Shown here in pieces: positions 3,628 to 60,550 of a DNA stretch of 64,000 nucleotides. Made by a program: the position numbers and the translations under genes. The stretch is from positions 207,655 to 271,654 of the IMG/VR virus record IMGVR_UViG_3300036944_001324; one strand, given 5' to 3'. How positions within the stretch are numbered: the first letter of the stretch is position 1; every line of letters begins with the position of its first letter. A model generated the notes under the pieces. That model was not told where the DNA came from. It saw only the letters and a list, made by a program, of their open reading frames with translations, and made no database searches.

Positions 3628-4340
3628 TCAAAACTTTGAAACTGTTTTCTCTGCTGCTGGTTGCAGCTTTTCTGGTGGCTTGTAACAAGGCGCCCAGCAA
3701 CGTACACGTGATCAACACCACGGACTGTGGGGTCACTTGGAAGCAGATCCCTACGGGGTCTGCGGTGCCCAAGACCCCGATGCATTGCGAGTACAACGTC
3801 GCGTTGCCTAACTGGCCGATGGCCGGTGATGCCGAGTTCCGAACACAGTTCCAAAAGAACGTGATGGCCAAGGTACGCATCAGCTACACGTACGAGATCG
3901 ATGATCCTGTTATGTACGTGAAGGAAGCACGCTACCTCGGCAAAATGGGCGGGTCTCTCGAACTGTCGGCCAGCAGCGTTGGTGATCAGTACGAGCTGGC
4001 CGAGAACATCATCATCGACAAACGCTTTCGTGAGATCATGACCGAGATCACACGCAACATCGATGTGATCACGTTTGACTCAGCCAAGCTCGAAGCCCAG
4101 GTGGAAAAAGAAATCACCGATCACCTGAAGAAGAACGGCATCAGTATGGGTGACATCGCTATGGTGATCGAGCTCGATGAGTTGACGCGTCTTTCCATCG
4201 ATACGGTGACGGCCATTCGTTTGTTCGAATCGGCTGGTGCTGCGGAAGTGGGGCGTGAAGTTCTCAAAGGTCGCGCTAGCGCTACCCGCATCATCGTCAG
4301 CAACGATCAACCGTCCAAACAAGCTAGTTCCAAAGACTAG
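3624..4340 (+). CDS. lipoprotein, SPFH/Band-7-like
   Basis: GTG start, lipobox FLVAC; SPFH-like pattern (VRISYTYEIDDP...REIMTEI...LEAQVEKEITDHLKKNGI) recognised by eye. Confidence 0.55.
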   Translation: MIKTLKLFSLLLVAAFLVACNKAPSNVHVINTTDCGVTWKQIPTGSAVPKTPMHCEYNVALPNWPMAGDAEFRTQFQKNVMAKVRISYTYEIDDPVMYVKEARYLGKMGGSLELSASSVGDQYELAENIIIDKRFREIMTEITRNIDVITFDSAKLEAQVEKEITDHLKKNGISMGDIAMVIELDELTRLSIDTVTAIRLFESAGAAEVGREVLKGRASATRIIVSNDQPSKQASSKD

Positions 4341-4492
4341 CGTTTCCCGAAAGAAGTTTCGCATGAATCCTCAAGGAATGCCATTCGCTTCGTACATGAT
4401 CGAAAGACTCATGAACGCGGTGTACAACAGCAAAGGTGCCGTGATGGCGCAGAAGGGGTCCACCGGACCTCCTGCAGCCCAGGAGAAGCATC

Positions 4493-4762
4493 TTGCAAAA
4501 ACATCATCGCGGCGAACGCCGCTTCCAAACTGAACGCCTGAAAAAGAAGCGTCAGTTCTATTGGGGTTATAGTCCAGATAGCCCTTTTGAAGAAACGCGA
4601 GTTATGTCTATTATCCAATTGTCACGAGTGGTACAGAATCCTGCTATCTGCTCGTGTGGTCTTTGTGGTCACGCAGCCCGTGGTTACTATGGAAATGGTT
4701 GGGAAGGCAAAACTGTGCAAGAACTGTCAGATCTGGAAGTGATTCGTAAACATCTGGTCTGA
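4493..4762 (+). CDS. small basic phage protein with CSCxxC motif
   Basis: AGGAG RBS, TTG start; HRGERRFQTERLKKKR and CSCGLCG. Confidence 0.65.
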   Translation: MQKHHRGERRFQTERLKKKRQFYWGYSPDSPFEETRVMSIIQLSRVVQNPAICSCGLCGHAARGYYGNGWEGKTVQELSDLEVIRKHLV

Positions 4763-15072: not shown

Positions 15073-15486
15073 ATGAGAAACGTTGTAATGAGAAGGCTTG
15101 GTAAAGAAGGTATGTCCAACTTGCGGACATACTGGAACCATTCTGACTTCCCTTCTGTATTGAAACAAGTGCAAAAGGACTTTCTGGACATGACAGCCAT
15201 GAAGTCCGTGAGCGGCAAACCGTACGTTGTACTGTGTCTGTTGTTCATCCATGCCATTCAAAAACTGATCGCGTTTGAGGCTGGCAAAGACGTCGATGAG
15301 TGTTTGCTGCATGAAGCAGTGGCTATCGCTGTTTACGTCACGTCTGTAAAACCAAGATCCGTTACACCTAATCGGTACTACACGTTGGTAACGACAATGA
15401 TGGATCTGCAACGACACGATGAAACTTTCAACAAACTCATCGATGCTTTTCTAACCTGGGATGAAACTGAAGGAAGAAGACCGTGA
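15073..15486 (+). CDS. hypothetical protein, paralog of 15822..16226
   Basis: YWNHSDFPSVLKQVQKDFL...PYVVLCLL vs YWTRPVFQSLLRDVRKDFL...PFVVACLL. Confidence 0.7.
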   Translation: MRNVVMRRLGKEGMSNLRTYWNHSDFPSVLKQVQKDFLDMTAMKSVSGKPYVVLCLLFIHAIQKLIAFEAGKDVDECLLHEAVAIAVYVTSVKPRSVTPNRYYTLVTTMMDLQRHDETFNKLIDAFLTWDETEGRRP

Positions 15487-15553: not shown

Positions 15554-15799
15554 ATGTCGACTGAAAACAAAGAAAAGCGTTTTATCGCTGGAAGCAGATC
15601 TGAGTTTTTTAACGGTCTTCAAGGACCGTCAGTATTTTATCCGTTAAAGCAACACATCGTGAGAGAGAATCTCACGATCGTTGAGCAGGAGAACAGACTA
15701 ATACTCAGAGCAAGAGATGCTACTGGCGGTTACTACAGTGGGGACGACTTCACGATGTACGTCGGAAAGCCGTATAAAGGTACCGTTGGCGATAGCTAA
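15554..15799 (+). CDS. small hypothetical protein
   Basis: 81-aa ORF in operon. Confidence 0.6.
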   Translation: MSTENKEKRFIAGSRSEFFNGLQGPSVFYPLKQHIVRENLTIVEQENRLILRARDATGGYYSGDDFTMYVGKPYKGTVGDS

Positions 15800-15821
15800 A
15801 CAAACACGAGGAAAACAAAAC

Positions 15822-16226
15822 ATGAGAAAAGAAGCAGTTGATAAAAACTTTGGCTCGGCCCTGGAGGCATATTGGACCAGGCCTGTATTCCAGTCTTTAC
15901 TTCGAGATGTTCGCAAAGACTTCCTCGAAGCGACAGGTCTATCTACCCTTGCCGGCGTACCTTTCGTAGTTGCGTGCCTTTTGTTGGCTTCAACCATGGA
16001 TCGTCTGGCCGCCGGGTACAGTGGATCATCAACCCGTGATGATAGCCTGCTGTACGAAGCTATCGGCATTGGTGGTTTCTACTGGGGCGGTAACCCACGG
16101 CACCCACAAGGGACACGCTATGGTTCGTTGGTATATGCTGTCAGCTCTGCGCAGTCTGCTAACAAGGATTTCCGGGCGTTTTGTGACTCTTTCATTGCTG
16201 AAGTCTTTCAGGACATAAAACCATGA
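15822..16226 (+). CDS. hypothetical protein, paralog of 15073..15486
   Basis: GAGGA RBS; pairwise similarity. Confidence 0.7.
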   Translation: MRKEAVDKNFGSALEAYWTRPVFQSLLRDVRKDFLEATGLSTLAGVPFVVACLLLASTMDRLAAGYSGSSTRDDSLLYEAIGIGGFYWGGNPRHPQGTRYGSLVYAVSSAQSANKDFRAFCDSFIAEVFQDIKP

Positions 16227-16600
16227 CGTTCACCTGGTCCCGTAAAGGCGGTTACGAGTGCTCTAGCACTGGTGACAAACGCTTCTCTGCTTTCCATGCC
16301 AAAATGCCAGATGGTCGCACGATCGAGCATCACTACCAATGTGATGTAAAAGGATACCAACCTGGCGGTCGTGACTGGAAACTTGGTAAAGGCAAGCCAC
16401 CACTGACACCAATGACTCCTGAAGCCCTCTACGAGGCCTACAAGGCCTTGTGGGTGACGTGGGCTAAGGCTAACCCTCACCTGATGATGGAACTGCGTTC
16501 TAAGGCCTTAGAGCACAACTGCCTTCTCAGCGACATGTACGCTACTACATCGGTCAATCAGGCTCATGCCTTGGCCGACTTACTCAACGAAGGATACTGA
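16223..16600 (+). CDS. NADAR-like protein (putative ADP-ribose hydrolase)
   Basis: RFSAF, TIEHHYQCDVK, WKLGKG, NPHLMMEL, NQAHALADLL parallel the NADAR motifs FSNF, TxEHYYQAxK, K.LGR, N..L...L, N.LG..LM. Confidence 0.5.
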   Translation: MTFTWSRKGGYECSSTGDKRFSAFHAKMPDGRTIEHHYQCDVKGYQPGGRDWKLGKGKPPLTPMTPEALYEAYKALWVTWAKANPHLMMELRSKALEHNCLLSDMYATTSVNQAHALADLLNEGY

Positions 16601-20603: not shown

Positions 20604-22676
20604 ATGACAAACGAAGAACAAGAGTATCTCAAGATCAACGAGAAGCTGCGTGAGGCCGCGCCAGCGTACTACGTTGAAGACAAGCCCATCATGACCGATG
20701 CCGAATACGATCAATTGATCGTTCGTGCTCGCGAATTGGAAAAGCGTGTTGATAAAGCGATCGTCGATGCTGAACGCCTGAAGGGTACGCCACTGTACGA
20801 CGTGGTTGGATCTGTTGCCAAGGGTCTTAAGCCTGCTAAGCATGAGACACCTATGCTCAGTTTGCGTACTGAGACGAATACTTCCGATGAACCCATCCGT
20901 AATTTCCTGCTGAAAGTGGGAAAGCGGCTGGACGAACTTGGTTTTCCACCGAATTGTACCAGTTACTGTGCTGAGTACAAATTTGACGGACTGGCTTTGA
21001 GCCTCAAGTACAGGGATGGAAAACTTCTCCGTGCAGTTACCCGTGGCGACGGTTACGAAGGTGAAAACGTTACGCATAACGCTCTCGTCGTTAAAGGCAT
21101 ACCTACGACTATCGGTCTGAAGCGGGATCTGGAAGTTCGTGGTGAAGTGATGATGACTAAAGAGATGTTTGCTAGTTTGAATAAGCAAGCATTGATAAGC
21201 GGAAGTCGTGTCTTTGTAAACCCGCGTAACGCTGCCGCTGGTTCCATGCGACTTCTCGATTCGAATGAATGCAAACGACGCGGACTAATCTTTGTTGCTT
21301 ACAGCGCCATAGGGCCTGCGGTTGATATGGAAACCGACAGCCATCTCTATCGCATATTGACCTTGGAAAACCTGGGTTTTGAAATCGGGCTTACACCTCT
21401 ACGTACTAAAACACCAGAGCGACTAGCGGAGTTCTACCAAAAGACTCTCAATGAACGGACCACAATACCGTTTGAAATCGATGGGGTAGTCTACAAAGTC
21501 GACTCTATCGAGCAACAAGAAAAGCTTGGTGTCATCGGTAAAGAACCTGTCTGGGCAATTGCTCACAAGTTCCCACCGGAGGAAGCCACCACCAGACTCG
21601 AGAGCATCGACATCCAAGTCGGGCGCACTGGCAAGTTCACTCCCGTCGCCAAGTTGAAGCCTATCTTCGTGGGTGGCGTTACTGTATCGAGCGTGACGCT
21701 CAGTAACATCTTCGACGTGCGTCGCAAGGACATCCGTCCAGGCGATACGGTGTTCGTTCGTCGTGCTGGTGACGTGATCCCTGAGATCACGACACGAGCC
21801 AACCGTAAGCGTGATGGTTACGTTCCTAACTTCCAGATGCCTCCCCAGTGTCCGGTTTGCGGCGGACTTGCTATCCGTTTCAAAGGCGAAAGCAACTACC
21901 AATGCACCAACAAGTACGAGTGTCCGGCGCAACTCTCTGGCTCCATCTTGCATTACGTCAGTCGTGCCTGTATGGACATCGAGGGTTTTGGTGAAGAGAC
22001 GGTTGACCTGTTGACGAAAGAAGGCTACGTGCGTTCATTCGTTGACTTGTACCGCTTGACACCACAGATCCTTACAGAAGTAGGATTGGGTCCGAAGAAA
22101 GGACAGAACCTGCTCGACGCCATCGATGGTTCTCGTGTGAACTCTCTAGCTCGTTTCATCTACGGGCTGGGTATTCGCTATGTGGGTGCCAACACTTCCA
22201 AGATTCTTGCTAATCGTTTCAAGACGATCGGTGCGCTCTTTGAAGCCAAGCGGGAAGAACTCATCAACCTGCCTGACATGGGGCCCGTTACAACGGACTC
22301 CGTGGTTTCCTACATCGGCAACGCGCACAGGCGAGCGTTGGTGTTTGAGACCATTGCGGTGGGTAAGTTGATTCTGACCACCGTAGAGCAACCTCCAAAG
22401 CCCGTAGGACCGCTCACAGGCCAATCTTTCGTGGTGTCTGGACGGTTGACACACTACGAAGCGATAGAGCCTTCTAAGACCCGTGAAGCCTTCATTGATG
22501 TTTTGGAGGATCTGGGTGCTTCTGTCACCGATAAGGTGAATAAAGATACAACGGCACTTATCATAGGTGAGAAACCTTCGAGCAAGTTAGCCAAAGCGAA
22601 AGCTCTGGGCATCCGTGTTATGACAGACAAGGAAGCCATGGAACAGTTCATGAACCTGGAAGTCTCCACGTTCTAA
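20604..22676 (+). CDS. ligA: NAD-dependent DNA ligase
   Basis: domain Ia (YY...TDAEYD), KFDG motif I, EVRGEV, NPRNAAAGS, DGVVYK, QVGRTG, Zn finger CPVC...C...C, HhH, BRCT. Confidence 0.97.
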   Translation: MTNEEQEYLKINEKLREAAPAYYVEDKPIMTDAEYDQLIVRARELEKRVDKAIVDAERLKGTPLYDVVGSVAKGLKPAKHETPMLSLRTETNTSDEPIRNFLLKVGKRLDELGFPPNCTSYCAEYKFDGLALSLKYRDGKLLRAVTRGDGYEGENVTHNALVVKGIPTTIGLKRDLEVRGEVMMTKEMFASLNKQALISGSRVFVNPRNAAAGSMRLLDSNECKRRGLIFVAYSAIGPAVDMETDSHLYRILTLENLGFEIGLTPLRTKTPERLAEFYQKTLNERTTIPFEIDGVVYKVDSIEQQEKLGVIGKEPVWAIAHKFPPEEATTRLESIDIQVGRTGKFTPVAKLKPIFVGGVTVSSVTLSNIFDVRRKDIRPGDTVFVRRAGDVIPEITTRANRKRDGYVPNFQMPPQCPVCGGLAIRFKGESNYQCTNKYECPAQLSGSILHYVSRACMDIEGFGEETVDLLTKEGYVRSFVDLYRLTPQILTEVGLGPKKGQNLLDAIDGSRVNSLARFIYGLGIRYVGANTSKILANRFKTIGALFEAKREELINLPDMGPVTTDSVVSYIGNAHRRALVFETIAVGKLILTTVEQPPKPVGPLTGQSFVVSGRLTHYEAIEPSKTREAFIDVLEDLGASVTDKVNKDTTALIIGEKPSSKLAKAKALGIRVMTDKEAMEQFMNLEVSTF

Positions 22677-52285: not shown

Positions 52286-52642
52286 GTGGTCCAATTGGTT
52301 AAGCAAATAAACTCCATCATTATCACGGTGGTGAATCTCAAAAACAATCCACCTCCTGGAACAATACGTTGCGGTCGGCCTACTCCCCTTGGAAATCCTT
52401 TTCCGATGAAGAGCGAGGCCGATCGTGATAACGTCTGCGATAACTATCGCAGCTACTACTATCAAAAGAAAGCGCAGAGCGATCCCGCAATGGGTGAGAT
52501 GTTTTGTTGTCTCATGGATCACGCCATTGCTACCGGTGTTTTGAACATCGGTTGTTTTTGTGCTCCCGCTCGCTGTCACCTTGACACTGTCAAAGAAGAC
52601 CTCATCTACGAGCTTACTAAGCTCGGTTTCACTGTTTCCTAA
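52286..52642 (+). CDS. DUF4326 family protein (start uncertain)
   Basis: CGRPTPLGNPF...IGCFCAPARCH. Confidence 0.8.
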   Translation: MVQLVKQINSIIITVVNLKNNPPPGTIRCGRPTPLGNPFPMKSEADRDNVCDNYRSYYYQKKAQSDPAMGEMFCCLMDHAIATGVLNIGCFCAPARCHLDTVKEDLIYELTKLGFTVS

Positions 52643-59636: not shown

Positions 59637-60083
59637 ATGGACATCATTGACGTCGTGCATTTCTACCGAGACAACTATCACTACCGTAGATTACAACCTA
59701 CGAGTGTTTTTTGCTTCGGTAGTAATTTGCTCGGAATCCATGGTGCCGGTAGCGCGCTAGACGCACGCAAGTATTTCGGCGCCAGGTTAGGTTGTGGCGA
59801 AGGCTTTACAGGTCGGTGTTATGCAATACCGACCAAAGCCGATCCCAAAACAATACGAAGCATTCAAGACATTCGGGATAGTGTAGAGCTCTTTAAGAAA
59901 GTAGCCCGCCACCATCCTGAAAAGAACTTCATAGTAACTCCCATTGGTACGGGTCTTAGTGGTTACGATCACCAAGAGATGGCCCAGTTGTTTCTGGACC
60001 TTCCTATCAACTGCGCAGTTACAAGGACGTGGGTGGACTATATCCCCCATGTTGAAAAAACAGACATCACAGACATAGTCTAA
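59637..60083 (+). CDS. macrodomain-like phage protein
   Basis: FCFGSNLLGIHGAGSA (N-x-GxxGxG loop) and VTPIGTGLSG (GxGxxG loop). Confidence 0.65.
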   Translation: MDIIDVVHFYRDNYHYRRLQPTSVFCFGSNLLGIHGAGSALDARKYFGARLGCGEGFTGRCYAIPTKADPKTIRSIQDIRDSVELFKKVARHHPEKNFIVTPIGTGLSGYDHQEMAQLFLDLPINCAVTRTWVDYIPHVEKTDITDIV

Positions 60084-60127: not shown

Positions 60128-60550
60128 ATGAACCCATCCCCCTATTTCAAGGAAATCACCGACGCTGATTTCGTCCAAGAAGTCCAAAACGCTGAAGGCA
60201 TTGTGGTGCTGGTCTTCTACCGCGACAACTGCGGTTCTTGCAAGACCTTCCAACCTGTCTTGGAAGAGTTTGCGTCACAGTACCGCGGCCAAGTCAAGTT
60301 CGTTCGTCTGAACACCAACACCGGTGGTACCTACCACTCGCGCCGCCTGGCTGCCGCCGGCGAGCCAGCTACCTTTGTGATGTACAAAGGTAACCAAGAA
60401 GGCTCTTTTGTGGGTGCTGCATTGCCGAAGTACTTCCACCCCATCATGGCCGACATCTTCACGTCTTTGGCAAATCGCTTGGGTATTCCAGCTCCTATGG
60501 CGATCACCGAGCTGTCTACCGCAAATGCAGCAACCGTAACCAGTTCATAA
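60128..60550 (+). CDS. thioredoxin
   Basis: VLVFYRDNCGSCK, VKFVRLN, cis-Pro EPATF. Confidence 0.85.
   Translation: MNPSPYFKEITDADFVQEVQNAEGIVVLVFYRDNCGSCKTFQPVLEEFASQYRGQVKFVRLNTNTGGTYHSRRLAAAGEPATFVMYKGNQEGSFVGAALPKYFHPIMADIFTSLANRLGIPAPMAITELSTANAATVTSS

What the first reader, a model, noticed from the sequence alone, without database searches (positions are those of the whole stretch)
16223..16600. Compact NADAR-like protein: candidate anti-DarT1 (guanine ADP-ribose eraser)
Seen: RFSAF / TIEHHYQCDVK / WKLGKG / NPHLMMEL / NQAHALADLL in the order of NADAR motifs. Established: NADARs, including T4 gp30.3, remove ADP-ribose from guanine in DNA, reversing DarT1. Inference: with the macro-like gene at 59637 (DarG-type, thymidine) the phage could erase both known DNA ADP-ribosylation marks.
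Basis: partly seen in the sequence, partly recalled or inferred. Interest (0 to 1): 0.6.

Follow-up and report, generated by a model that had tools for sequence, protein, structure and literature searches.

The report
Miniature NADAR ADP-ribose eraser, jumbo phage
A 125-residue gene in a phiKZ-like jumbo phage encodes a stripped-down member of the NADAR enzyme family, which removes ADP-ribose from DNA bases, so it is probably a phage counter-measure against the bacterial DarT1 defence toxin, in a clade that no database currently annotates.

The parts
16223..16600 (+). Compact NADAR gene (125 aa plus stop). Free-standing, ATG start, translationally coupled to the upstream ORF (ATGA overlap).
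   Evidence: ORF; fold; transitive homology to PF22397 members
16280..16294 (+). RFSAF motif (residues 20-24), counterpart of the NADAR 'FSNF' motif. R20, F21, S22 and A23 are 96-99% conserved.
16319..16351 (+). First core helix TIEHHYQCDVK (residues 33-43). E35 (16325-16327) is the predicted ribose-coordinating Glu and K43 (16349-16351) the predicted phosphate-binding Lys. The spacing is E+8, against E+7 in other NADARs.
   Evidence: alignment through the Rhizobium-phage protein to 8bat SVESAFQSSKVFE; E88/K95 of E. coli C7 NADAR
16376..16396 (+). WKLGKGK basic loop (residues 52-58). K56 is 265/266 conserved. It is a candidate counterpart of the Lys/Arg residues that shield the pyrophosphate or contact DNA (K115 of E. 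coli C7 NADAR). This assignment is inference only.
16526..16543 (+). Last strand plus catalytic Asp: LSDMYA (residues 102-107), with D104 at 16532-16534. The Asp at this position is the signature of the BC4488/DarT1-associated NADAR family.
   Evidence: strand 101-103; YSD aligned with FTD of 8bat; D104 265/266
16556..16573 (+). NQAHAL (residues 112-117), start of the C-terminal helix. It is the counterpart of the 'NCQA' segment of G. lovleyi NADAR. Q113 is 265/266 conserved.
59637..60083 (+). Probable companion: a 148-aa macrodomain protein (NCBIfam A1S_2505 family) with a TARG1/DarG-like fold. Candidate eraser of thymine-ADPr.
   Evidence: same-slot replacement of a compact NADAR in Rhodobacter phages
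52286..52642 (+). Possible companion: a DUF4326 protein. This domain is fused to compact NADARs in other elements and has been proposed in the literature to process ribose-linked phosphates of ADPr derivatives.
   Evidence: 53.2 bits; fusions; literature

Best explanation
The gene encodes a minimal (125-aa), free-standing enzyme of the NADAR superfamily, of the BC4488/DarT1-associated type. It most likely works as an orphan antitoxin-like counter-defence enzyme. When a host DarT1-type ADP-ribosyltransferase marks guanines in single-stranded phage DNA, the protein would bind the ADP-ribose and hydrolyse the N-glycosidic bond between ribose and base, restoring replicable DNA. In this model E35 and D104 flank the distal ribose and K43 (possibly with K56) holds the diphosphate. 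Shown here: the ORF, family conservation, the NADAR fold, homology to PF22397-class proteins, conservation of the catalytic set, absence of a phage DarT, and ADP-ribose-related fusion partners and companions. Inferred: hydrolase activity, guanine-ADPr DNA as the substrate, and DarT1 as the target.
Against: No NADAR profile detects the protein directly: Pfam hmmscan at E<=1 on the protein and on 57 relatives, PF08719 and PF22397 on the whole genome, NCBIfam, family profiles against PDB sequences, and hhalign against YbiA+gp30.3 (probability 0.5%). The Lys lies at E+8, not E+7. I could not inspect coordinates to confirm that K43 reaches the phosphate site. The protein lacks the roughly 50-residue basic N-terminal extension proposed to bind ssDNA in DarT1-associated NADARs. 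At least one core helix is replaced by a loop. The host is unknown, so it is not known whether it carries DarT1. In one published assay NADARs that were active in vitro (YbiA, gp30.3) did not rescue cells from DarT1, so fold and catalytic residues do not guarantee anti-DarT1 function.
Confidence: 0.5

Rival explanations
1. It is an active NADAR, but its natural substrate is a different ADP-ribosylated nucleic acid. Candidates are cytidine-ADPr, ADP-ribosylated RNA, or adducts made by non-DarT transferases such as YarT or pierisin/ScARP-like enzymes.
For: NADARs of several subfamilies remove cytidine-ADPr as well as guanine-ADPr (PMC12945103). A YbiA-type NADAR partners a non-DarT toxin, YarT. 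The missing N-terminal DNA-binding extension and the fusions to RNase H and helicases leave the nucleic-acid substrate open.
Against: The nearest detectable relatives and the Asp signature point to the DarT-linked BC4488 clade. The nearest structure is the DarT1 antitoxin 8bat.
Confidence: 0.2
2. It degrades small-molecule ADP-ribose derivatives, either immune signals or toxic metabolites made by host TIR, sirtuin or ART defence systems, and does not act on DNA adducts.
For: [quoted passage not shown] This phage carries NADAR, macro and DUF4326 genes. In Bacillus phage SP-15 the homologue sits next to a DUF1273 (SLOG-type) gene according to the depositor's annotation, and a NUDIX gene lies near the Rhizobium-phage homologue. 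The protein has no DNA-binding extension.
Against: Every NADAR tested so far acts on base-linked ADPr in nucleic acids. In five chimallivirus genera the domain directly follows the DNA-polymerase subunit gene, and it is fused to helicase and RNase H domains. Both point to DNA.
Confidence: 0.15
3. It is a metabolic or housekeeping N-glycosidase, like YbiA acting on riboflavin intermediates, or a non-catalytic binding module.
Against: [quoted passage not shown] The distribution is almost entirely mobile elements: jumbo and N4-like phages, plasmids and giant multidomain proteins. Near-invariance of the catalytic set argues for catalysis.
Confidence: 0.07
4. The resemblance to NADAR is chance convergence of short motifs on an unrelated small alpha/beta fold.
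For: All direct profile searches are negative. A DUF488 cluster is also a structural neighbour (TM 0.55).
Against: All three NADAR representatives are isolated at the top of 48,161 chains. There is significant full-length BLAST similarity to domains that pass Pfam's NADAR-DarT1 threshold. The catalytic motifs align colinearly.
Confidence: 0.03

Closest known systems
DarT1-associated NADAR antitoxin (DarG1; G. lovleyi PDB 8BAT, E. coli C7 NADAR; Pfam PF22397; BC4488 family)
   Different: About half the size (125 aa against 219-254). It lacks the basic N-terminal fold extension and part of the helical core. The Lys is at E+8. It is not encoded next to a DarT, so it is an orphan on a phage. The PF22397 model does not recognise it.
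T4 AdfN (gp30.3; Pfam PF08010), the phage orphan NADAR that counters DarTG1
   Same: Same concept: a phage-borne, toxin-less NADAR used as counter-defence. It was recognised in the same way, by an AlphaFold model matching the same three NADAR structures.
   Different: No detectable sequence similarity. gp30.3 has His where this protein has Asp. The phage lineage differs (T-even against chimallivirus), and acquisition was probably independent.
p043-like proteins (Rhizobium phage 16-3 p043, RHph_TM2_3B EVB95_187) and Bacillota NADAR-Macro / NADAR-DUF4326 fusions
   Same: The same compact domain of about 120 aa with 32-39% identity and the same motifs. These are the bridge to PF22397.
   Different: They keep the E+7 Lys spacing and are partly recognised by Pfam. 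The phiKZ-type clade, which includes the window protein, is not.
AdfM (phiKZ gp104), the chimallivirus DarG2-like macrodomain that counters DarTG2
   Same: A functional analogue in the same phage group: an enzymatic eraser of DNA ADP-ribosylation that is needed despite the phage nucleus.
   Different: Unrelated fold (macro) and a different mark (thymine). The window phage has no AdfM orthologue and instead carries a different TARG1/DarG-like macro protein at 59637.
E. coli YbiA (PDB 2B3W; Pfam PF08719)
   Different: YbiA has Glu in the last strand and has metabolic and SOS-operon roles. No sequence similarity is detectable.

Membership tests
NADAR superfamily | YbiA-like alpha+beta fold (helical core flanked by two small beta-sheets) | tested here: met
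NADAR superfamily | Conserved Glu on the first core helix followed by a Lys (E88/K95 in E. coli C7 NADAR) | tested here: met
   E35 is 99% and K43 265/266 conserved. They align through the bridging protein to SVESAFQSSK of 8bat. The spacing is E+8 instead of E+7, and the geometry has not been checked.
NADAR superfamily | Match to a curated NADAR profile (PF08719, PF08010, PF22397) above threshold | tested here: not met
   No hit at E<=1 for the protein or for 57 relatives. There is no hit in the genome. Only transitive: relatives at BLASTP E 3e-16 and 1e-12 pass PF22397.
NADAR superfamily | ADP-ribosyl N-glycosidase activity | not testable with these tools
   Needs biochemistry.
BC4488 / DarT1-associated NADAR family | Aspartate as the charged residue at the last beta-strand (D171 in E. 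coli C7) | tested here: met
   D104 follows strand 101-103, aligns with the D of FTD in 8bat and is 265/266 conserved. The criterion comes from PMC11125620.
BC4488 / DarT1-associated NADAR family | Genetic linkage to a DarT toxin gene | tested here: not met
   No PF14487 match in the 271-kb genome at E<=1. The neighbouring genes have no family assignment. The gene is an orphan, like T4 AdfN.
BC4488 / DarT1-associated NADAR family | Basic N-terminal extension of the YbiA fold (proposed ssDNA groove) | tested here: not met
   Relatives align only to PF22397 positions 48-201 of 212. The window protein has about 10 residues before the first conserved motif.
BC4488 / DarT1-associated NADAR family | Lys equivalent to K115 (needed for rescue in vivo) | tested here: inconclusive
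   K56 (265/266) and K58 (90%) in the GKGK loop are candidates by position. No residue-level structural alignment was available.
Phage gp30.3 / AdfN family (PF08010) | Sequence match to PF08010 and His in the last strand | tested here: not met
   BLASTP E 0.37. hhalign probability 0.5%. Asp is present, not His.
Macrodomain, TARG1/DarG clade (for the companion gene 59637-60083) | Macro fold closest to TARG1/DarG, with a Lys in the P-T-K position | tested here: met
   Model pLDDT 82.7, with core blocks (residues 21-130) at 90-98. Foldseek gives TARG1 E 4e-4, with DarTG 7omu and DarG 5m3i and 5m3e in the top 14, all at probability 1.00. The family profile hits TARG1 sequences at E 0.03 over the YAIPTK segment. 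Pfam Macro scores only 13.4 bits, below the cut-off.

The most novel reading that the evidence does not exclude
The window gene is the free-standing form of a replisome-linked mini-NADAR. In phiKZ, HPP-Temi, Phabio, 201phi2-1 and PhiPA3 the same domain lies directly after the DNA polymerase subunit DNAP-N (gp82). A conserved C CCA AAG slippery heptamer abuts the polymerase stop codon, and the -1 frame is open from there into the NADAR. In three genera the NADAR has no start codon of its own. It may therefore be made by programmed -1 frameshifting as a polymerase-NADAR fusion. Such a fusion would carry the ADP-ribose eraser into the phage nucleus and to the replication fork, where DarT lesions on ssDNA block synthesis. 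It would be the guanine-side counterpart of the nuclear macrodomain AdfM.
Probability: 0.35. Interest if true: 0.85.

Novelty: new variant of a known kind. Interest (0 to 1): 0.62.

Why it matters
DarTG systems are a common anti-phage defence, and the two published enzymatic anti-DarT factors are T4 AdfN (a NADAR) and chimallivirus AdfM (a macrodomain). This finding points to a third group: a miniature NADAR clade that is very widespread. It occurs in jumbo chimalliviruses including the model phage phiKZ, in N4-like phages, on plasmids and inside giant multidomain proteins. Current annotation misses it entirely, and in phiKZ, HPP-Temi, Phabio, Psa21 and RcJoli the gene is truncated or absent in the deposited annotation. 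If active, it would show that nucleus-forming phages carry erasers for both known DNA ADP-ribosylation marks. It would also define the minimal catalytic core of a NADAR at about 120 residues, useful for structure-function work. The possible frameshift fusion to the replicative polymerase would be a new way of delivering a repair or counter-defence enzyme to the fork.

Tried and rejected
1. Direct family assignment failed. This covers Pfam at E<=1, PHROGs (only phrog_9995, unknown function), NCBIfam, Pfam on 57 relatives, PF08719 and PF22397 scans of the whole genome, phmmer and profile searches of PDB sequences, and BLASTP against T4 gp30.3.

2. hhalign of the family against a YbiA+gp30.3 alignment gave probability 0.5%. 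The tool call itself failed, so I ran it by script. The relaxed alignment was colinear with the motif mapping but carries no statistical weight.

3. The ESM Atlas feature search for the NADAR returned nothing usable, and the Atlas's own model of the protein is poor.

4. Megablast of the surrounding 3.5 kb against phage genomes found no match.

5. DUF488 as the identity of the domain is rejected. In P0162 the DUF488-N3a hit (residues 456-528) lies between two copies of the domain (246-390 and 731-873), so it is a fusion partner. The weak DUF488-N3i hits (E 0.025) and the TM 0.55 structural neighbour remain unexplained.

6. Self-immunity against a phage-encoded DarT is rejected, because the genome has no DarT.

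7. The 59637 protein as an orthologue of phiKZ AdfM is rejected (pairwise E 0.002 over 46 residues; no AdfM match in the genome).

8. A single-protein search for relatives of the 59637 protein in viral contigs found nothing. It worked with a two-sequence alignment.

9. The genome search 'relatives' is not available for a virus record.

10. A stimulatory RNA structure for the proposed frameshift is inconclusive. Hairpins are predicted with z from -1.5 to -4.5, but they lie 13-20 nt from the heptamer and overlap strongly conserved codons.

11. The supplement of the viral NAD/ADPr survey is not held, so I could not check whether that survey listed these proteins.

12. The sequencing-read tools were not used.

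Full report
**Observation.** Its ATG overlaps the stop codon of the upstream ORF (ATGA), and the next ORF starts two bases after its stop. All five quoted motifs are present in the stated order.

**Source genome.** The window is the last 64 kb of a 271,654-bp viral record judged 99% complete. The phage is a distant phiKZ-like jumbo phage. Its SNF2 helicase is at most 42% identical to those of Noxifer, HPP-Temi, 201phi2-1 and Psa21. It also encodes a distant homologue of the phiKZ nuclear-shell protein chimallin. GC content is about 49%.

**The family.**
- Pfam gives no hit at E<=1 and PHROGs gives only phrog_9995, of unknown function. NCBIfam gives nothing.
- The word search returned 668 proteins, none carrying a Pfam domain or an informative name.
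- The exhaustive search found 605 representative clusters at 50% identity, 84 of them below E 1e-30.
- In deposited phage genomes the protein occurs in phiKZ, 201phi2-1, PhiPA3, Phabio, Psa21, HPP-Temi, N4-like Achromobacter and Delftia phages, and Sphingomonas phage PAU. More distant relatives are in Rhizobium phage 16-3 (p043), Ralstonia phage RP13 and Bacillus phage SP-15. All are annotated as hypothetical.
- Of 146 representatives, only 22 are 160 aa or shorter, 72 are 161-400 aa, 22 are 401-1500 aa and 30 exceed 1500 aa. The domain is therefore often a module of larger proteins.
- Identified fusion partners are RNase H, DUF4326, a PIF1-type helicase and DUF488-N3a. Two giants of about 4,000 aa had no Pfam domain at all.
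- Conservation is extreme. Across 266 domain copies S22, E35, Y38 and Q39 are 99% conserved, and K43, K56, W77, D104 and Q113 are each 265/266.

**Fold.** With a 57-sequence alignment AlphaFold2 gives pLDDT 98.2 and pTM 0.91.
- Foldseek against the PDB ranks the Geobacter lovleyi DarT1-associated NADAR (8bat) first, though weakly: E 0.35, TM 0.53.
- The ESM Atlas shape search gives the 'p043 family' (TM 0.74, 21% of members carrying Pfam PF22397 NADAR-DarT1). Next comes the 'DarT1-associated NADAR antitoxin family' (TM 0.71, PF22397 68%, Macro 64%).
- In BFVD, after the protein's own family, the weak neighbours include several annotated NADAR and DUF4326 proteins.

**Sequence link.** Direct profile methods fail:
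- the family profile against PDB sequences;
- hhalign against a YbiA+gp30.3 alignment, probability 0.5%;
- PF08719 and PF22397 scans of the genome.

A transitive chain holds:
- The window protein aligns with the 120-aa protein EVB95_187 of Rhizobium phage RHph_TM2_3B at BLASTP E 3e-16 and 39% identity (tblastn E 2e-7 against 2.3 Gb). That protein scores 39.4 bits on PF22397, above the 27-bit cut-off. p043 scores 25.0 bits and RP13 ORF163 20.5 bits.
- The bridging family extends to Bacillota plasmid proteins. A 322-aa Brevibacillus protein matches PF22397 over residues 2-145 (profile positions 52-201 of 212; 35.1 bits) and also has a Macro domain. That Macro domain matches the NCBIfam DarG model at E 4e-16.
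- The window protein aligns to the Brevibacillus NADAR domain over residues 12-124 at E 1e-12.
- A Bacillus wiedmannii protein combines PF22397 (27.5 bits) with DUF4326.

**Active site.** The bridging protein's best PDB sequence match is again 8bat, in two colinear blocks: SIEDIYQSSKIFE with SVESAFQSSKVFE, and YSDIFG...ACQA with FTDIEF...NCQA.
- Combined with the family alignment, this places E35, K43 and D104 on the residues that Schuller et al. showed to be needed for guanine-ADPr hydrolysis and DarT1 rescue: E88, K95 and D171 of E. coli C7 NADAR (PMC11543638).
- The residue after the last strand separates the subfamilies. It is Glu in YbiA, Asp in the BC4488 family (the only family linked to DarT) and His in phage gp30.3 (PMC11125620). 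Here it is Asp, directly after predicted strand 101-103.
- The protein is therefore a reduced BC4488/DarT1-type NADAR, not a gp30.3-type one.
- It differs from that family in four ways. The Lys is at E+8 instead of E+7. The basic N-terminal extension is absent. The segment 44-65 is a Gly/Lys-rich loop where larger NADARs have helices. No DarT is encoded in the genome.

**Context.**
- The upstream 169-aa ORF and the ORF before it are paralogues of unknown function (E 2e-24).
- In a 256-kb relative the order is conserved: a 159-aa gene, the NADAR, a 212-aa gene, further genes, then the NAD-dependent ligase. There a DUF4326 gene follows the ligase directly.
- In the window the ligase is at 20604-22676, and a DUF4326 gene lies at 52286-52642 (53.2 bits).
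- The family also sits next to an integrase on a Burkholderiaceae plasmid-like contig.

**The companion gene at 59637-60083.**
- Pfam Macro scores only 13.4 bits.
- NCBIfam assigns the protein to the A1S_2505 phage non-structural protein family (118.6 bits).
- With 39 viral homologues the model has pLDDT 82.7, with blocks covering residues 21-130 at 90-98.
- Foldseek's top PDB hits are TARG1 (E 4e-4, probability 1.00), Thermosipho DarTG, and the M. tuberculosis and T. aquaticus DarG macrodomains.
- The family profile hits TARG1 sequences at E 0.03.
- It is not an orthologue of phiKZ AdfM.
- In the sister Rhodobacter phages RcJoli and RcRios the same syntenic slot holds either an unannotated compact NADAR or a member of this macro family. 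This argues that the two are functional analogues.
- In Achromobacter phage Axy12 both genes lie in the early left-end region, ahead of the RNA polymerase genes.

**Biological plausibility.** DarT2 was shown to modify phiKZ DNA despite the phage nucleus, and the imported macrodomain AdfM is required to counter it (PMC13309987). An equivalent need for a guanine-side eraser is therefore reasonable. That paper mentions NADAR only with reference to T4 AdfN. Neither it, nor the AdfN paper, nor a 2026 preprint on the phiKZ split polymerase mentions a chimallivirus NADAR.

**Observation outside the window: a possible frameshift fusion.**
- In phiKZ the homologue has no ATG, GTG or TTG start, and GenBank annotates only its last 38 codons as PHIKZ082.1.
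- Its frame is -1 relative to gp82, the DNAP-N subunit of the replicative polymerase. gp82 ends ...AAC CCA AAG TAA, so an X XXY YYZ slippery heptamer sits directly before the stop.
- The same C CCA AAG heptamer, in the same frame relationship and with the -1 frame open into the NADAR, occurs in HPP-Temi, Phabio, 201phi2-1 and PhiPA3. Counting phiKZ, that makes five genera with diverged flanking DNA.
- phiKZ, HPP-Temi and Phabio have no canonical start. 201phi2-1 has a GTG start and PhiPA3 an ATG start. Psa21 lacks the heptamer and has a different frame offset with a possible TTG start.
- The C-terminal Pro-Lys of the polymerase is conserved, which partly explains why the heptamer is conserved.
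- Downstream hairpins are predicted but sit too far away to be convincing.
- A stop codon adjacent to a slippery run is a classical enhancer of frameshifting; this rests on my own knowledge.
- In the window phage the gp82 homologue lies at 13-15 kb, ends VEVPA-stop without a heptamer, and is not followed by a NADAR. Here the NADAR is free-standing.

**Verdict.** The NADAR assignment is well supported, at about 0.9 for fold and homology. The anti-DarT1 function is the most likely reading, at about 0.5, but it is untested. This is a new, miniature and unannotated variant of a known kind of phage counter-defence enzyme.

Noticed in passing
L001:3995-4372 (phiKZ NC_004629 79867-80244); L103:2495-2869 (HPP-Temi); L106:1495-1872 (Phabio); L104:2480-2872 (201phi2-1); L105:1495-1872 (PhiPA3): The compact NADAR directly follows the DNA polymerase subunit gene (gp82 type). 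A conserved C CCA AAG slippery heptamer sits just before the polymerase stop, and the -1 frame is open from there into the NADAR. phiKZ, HPP-Temi and Phabio have no canonical start codon for the NADAR. This suggests a polymerase-NADAR fusion made by -1 frameshifting. Psa21 (L107) is an exception.
   Followed up: partly
L016:~2490-2860 (RcJoli) and L017:2492-2860 (RcRios): Sister Rhodobacter phages carry, in the same syntenic slot, either an unannotated p043-type compact NADAR (RcJoli) or an A1S_2505-family macro protein annotated 'ADP-ribosyltransferase' (RcRios). Replacement of one family by an unrelated one in the same slot suggests they are functional analogues.
   Followed up: partly
window 59637-60083 (+): A 148-aa protein of the NCBIfam A1S_2505 family. 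It falls below the Pfam Macro threshold but has a TARG1/DarG-like macro fold. The family is widespread in N4-like phages and is not orthologous to phiKZ AdfM.
   Followed up: yes
window 52286-52642 (+): A DUF4326 gene (53.2 bits). The same domain is fused to compact NADARs in other elements and directly follows the NAD-dependent ligase in a 256-kb relative (L012:11615-11902).
   Followed up: partly
L008:3992-4960 (Brevibacillus plasmid); L009:3995-4699 (Bacillus wiedmannii plasmid): Single polypeptides join a compact NADAR-DarT1 domain to a DarG-type macrodomain (Brevibacillus) or to DUF4326 (B. wiedmannii). The first would be a candidate dual eraser of guanine- and thymine-linked ADP-ribose.
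   Followed up: partly
window 15073-15486 and 15717-16226 (+): Two tandem paralogous ORFs of unknown function (34% identity, E 2e-24) lie immediately upstream of the NADAR. The second overlaps the NADAR start codon, and a 159-aa homologue keeps this position in close relatives (L012, L013).
   Followed up: partly
proteins P0157, P0164, P0162 and about 30 others: The domain is embedded in giant proteins of 1,500-6,100 aa, two of which had no Pfam domain at all. P0162 has two copies flanking a DUF488-N3a domain. These look like polyvalent proteins of mobile elements.
   Followed up: partly
ESM Atlas row 3; A1 members: A DUF488 cluster is a structural neighbour of the model (TM 0.55), and two family members weakly hit DUF488-N3i (E 0.025). 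It is not resolved whether DUF488 shares ancestry with NADAR.
   Followed up: no
G000:C1:~165237-167105 (outside the window): A 689-aa ORF is distantly related (22-27% identity) to the phiKZ nuclear-shell protein chimallin, so the phage is probably nucleus-forming but far from described genera.
   Followed up: partly
window 20604-22676 (+) and 60128-60550 (+): A full-length NAD-dependent DNA ligase (adenylation, OB, Zn-finger, HhH and BRCT domains) and a thioredoxin. The phage therefore depends on NAD for ligation and also carries several ADP-ribose-processing genes.
   Followed up: no
L005:1330-2374 (Bacillus phage SP-15); L006:760-1170: In SP-15 the compact NADAR homologue overlaps the end of a DUF1273 (SLOG-type) gene, according to the depositor's annotation. 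In Rhizobium phage RHph_TM2_3B a NUDIX hydrolase gene lies 1.3 kb upstream.
   Followed up: no
L098:1858-2247 and 4321-4716 (Achromobacter phage Axy12): In this N4-like phage both the compact NADAR and the A1S_2505 macro-like gene lie among the small left-end genes ahead of the RNA polymerase genes. This is consistent with early expression.
   Followed up: no
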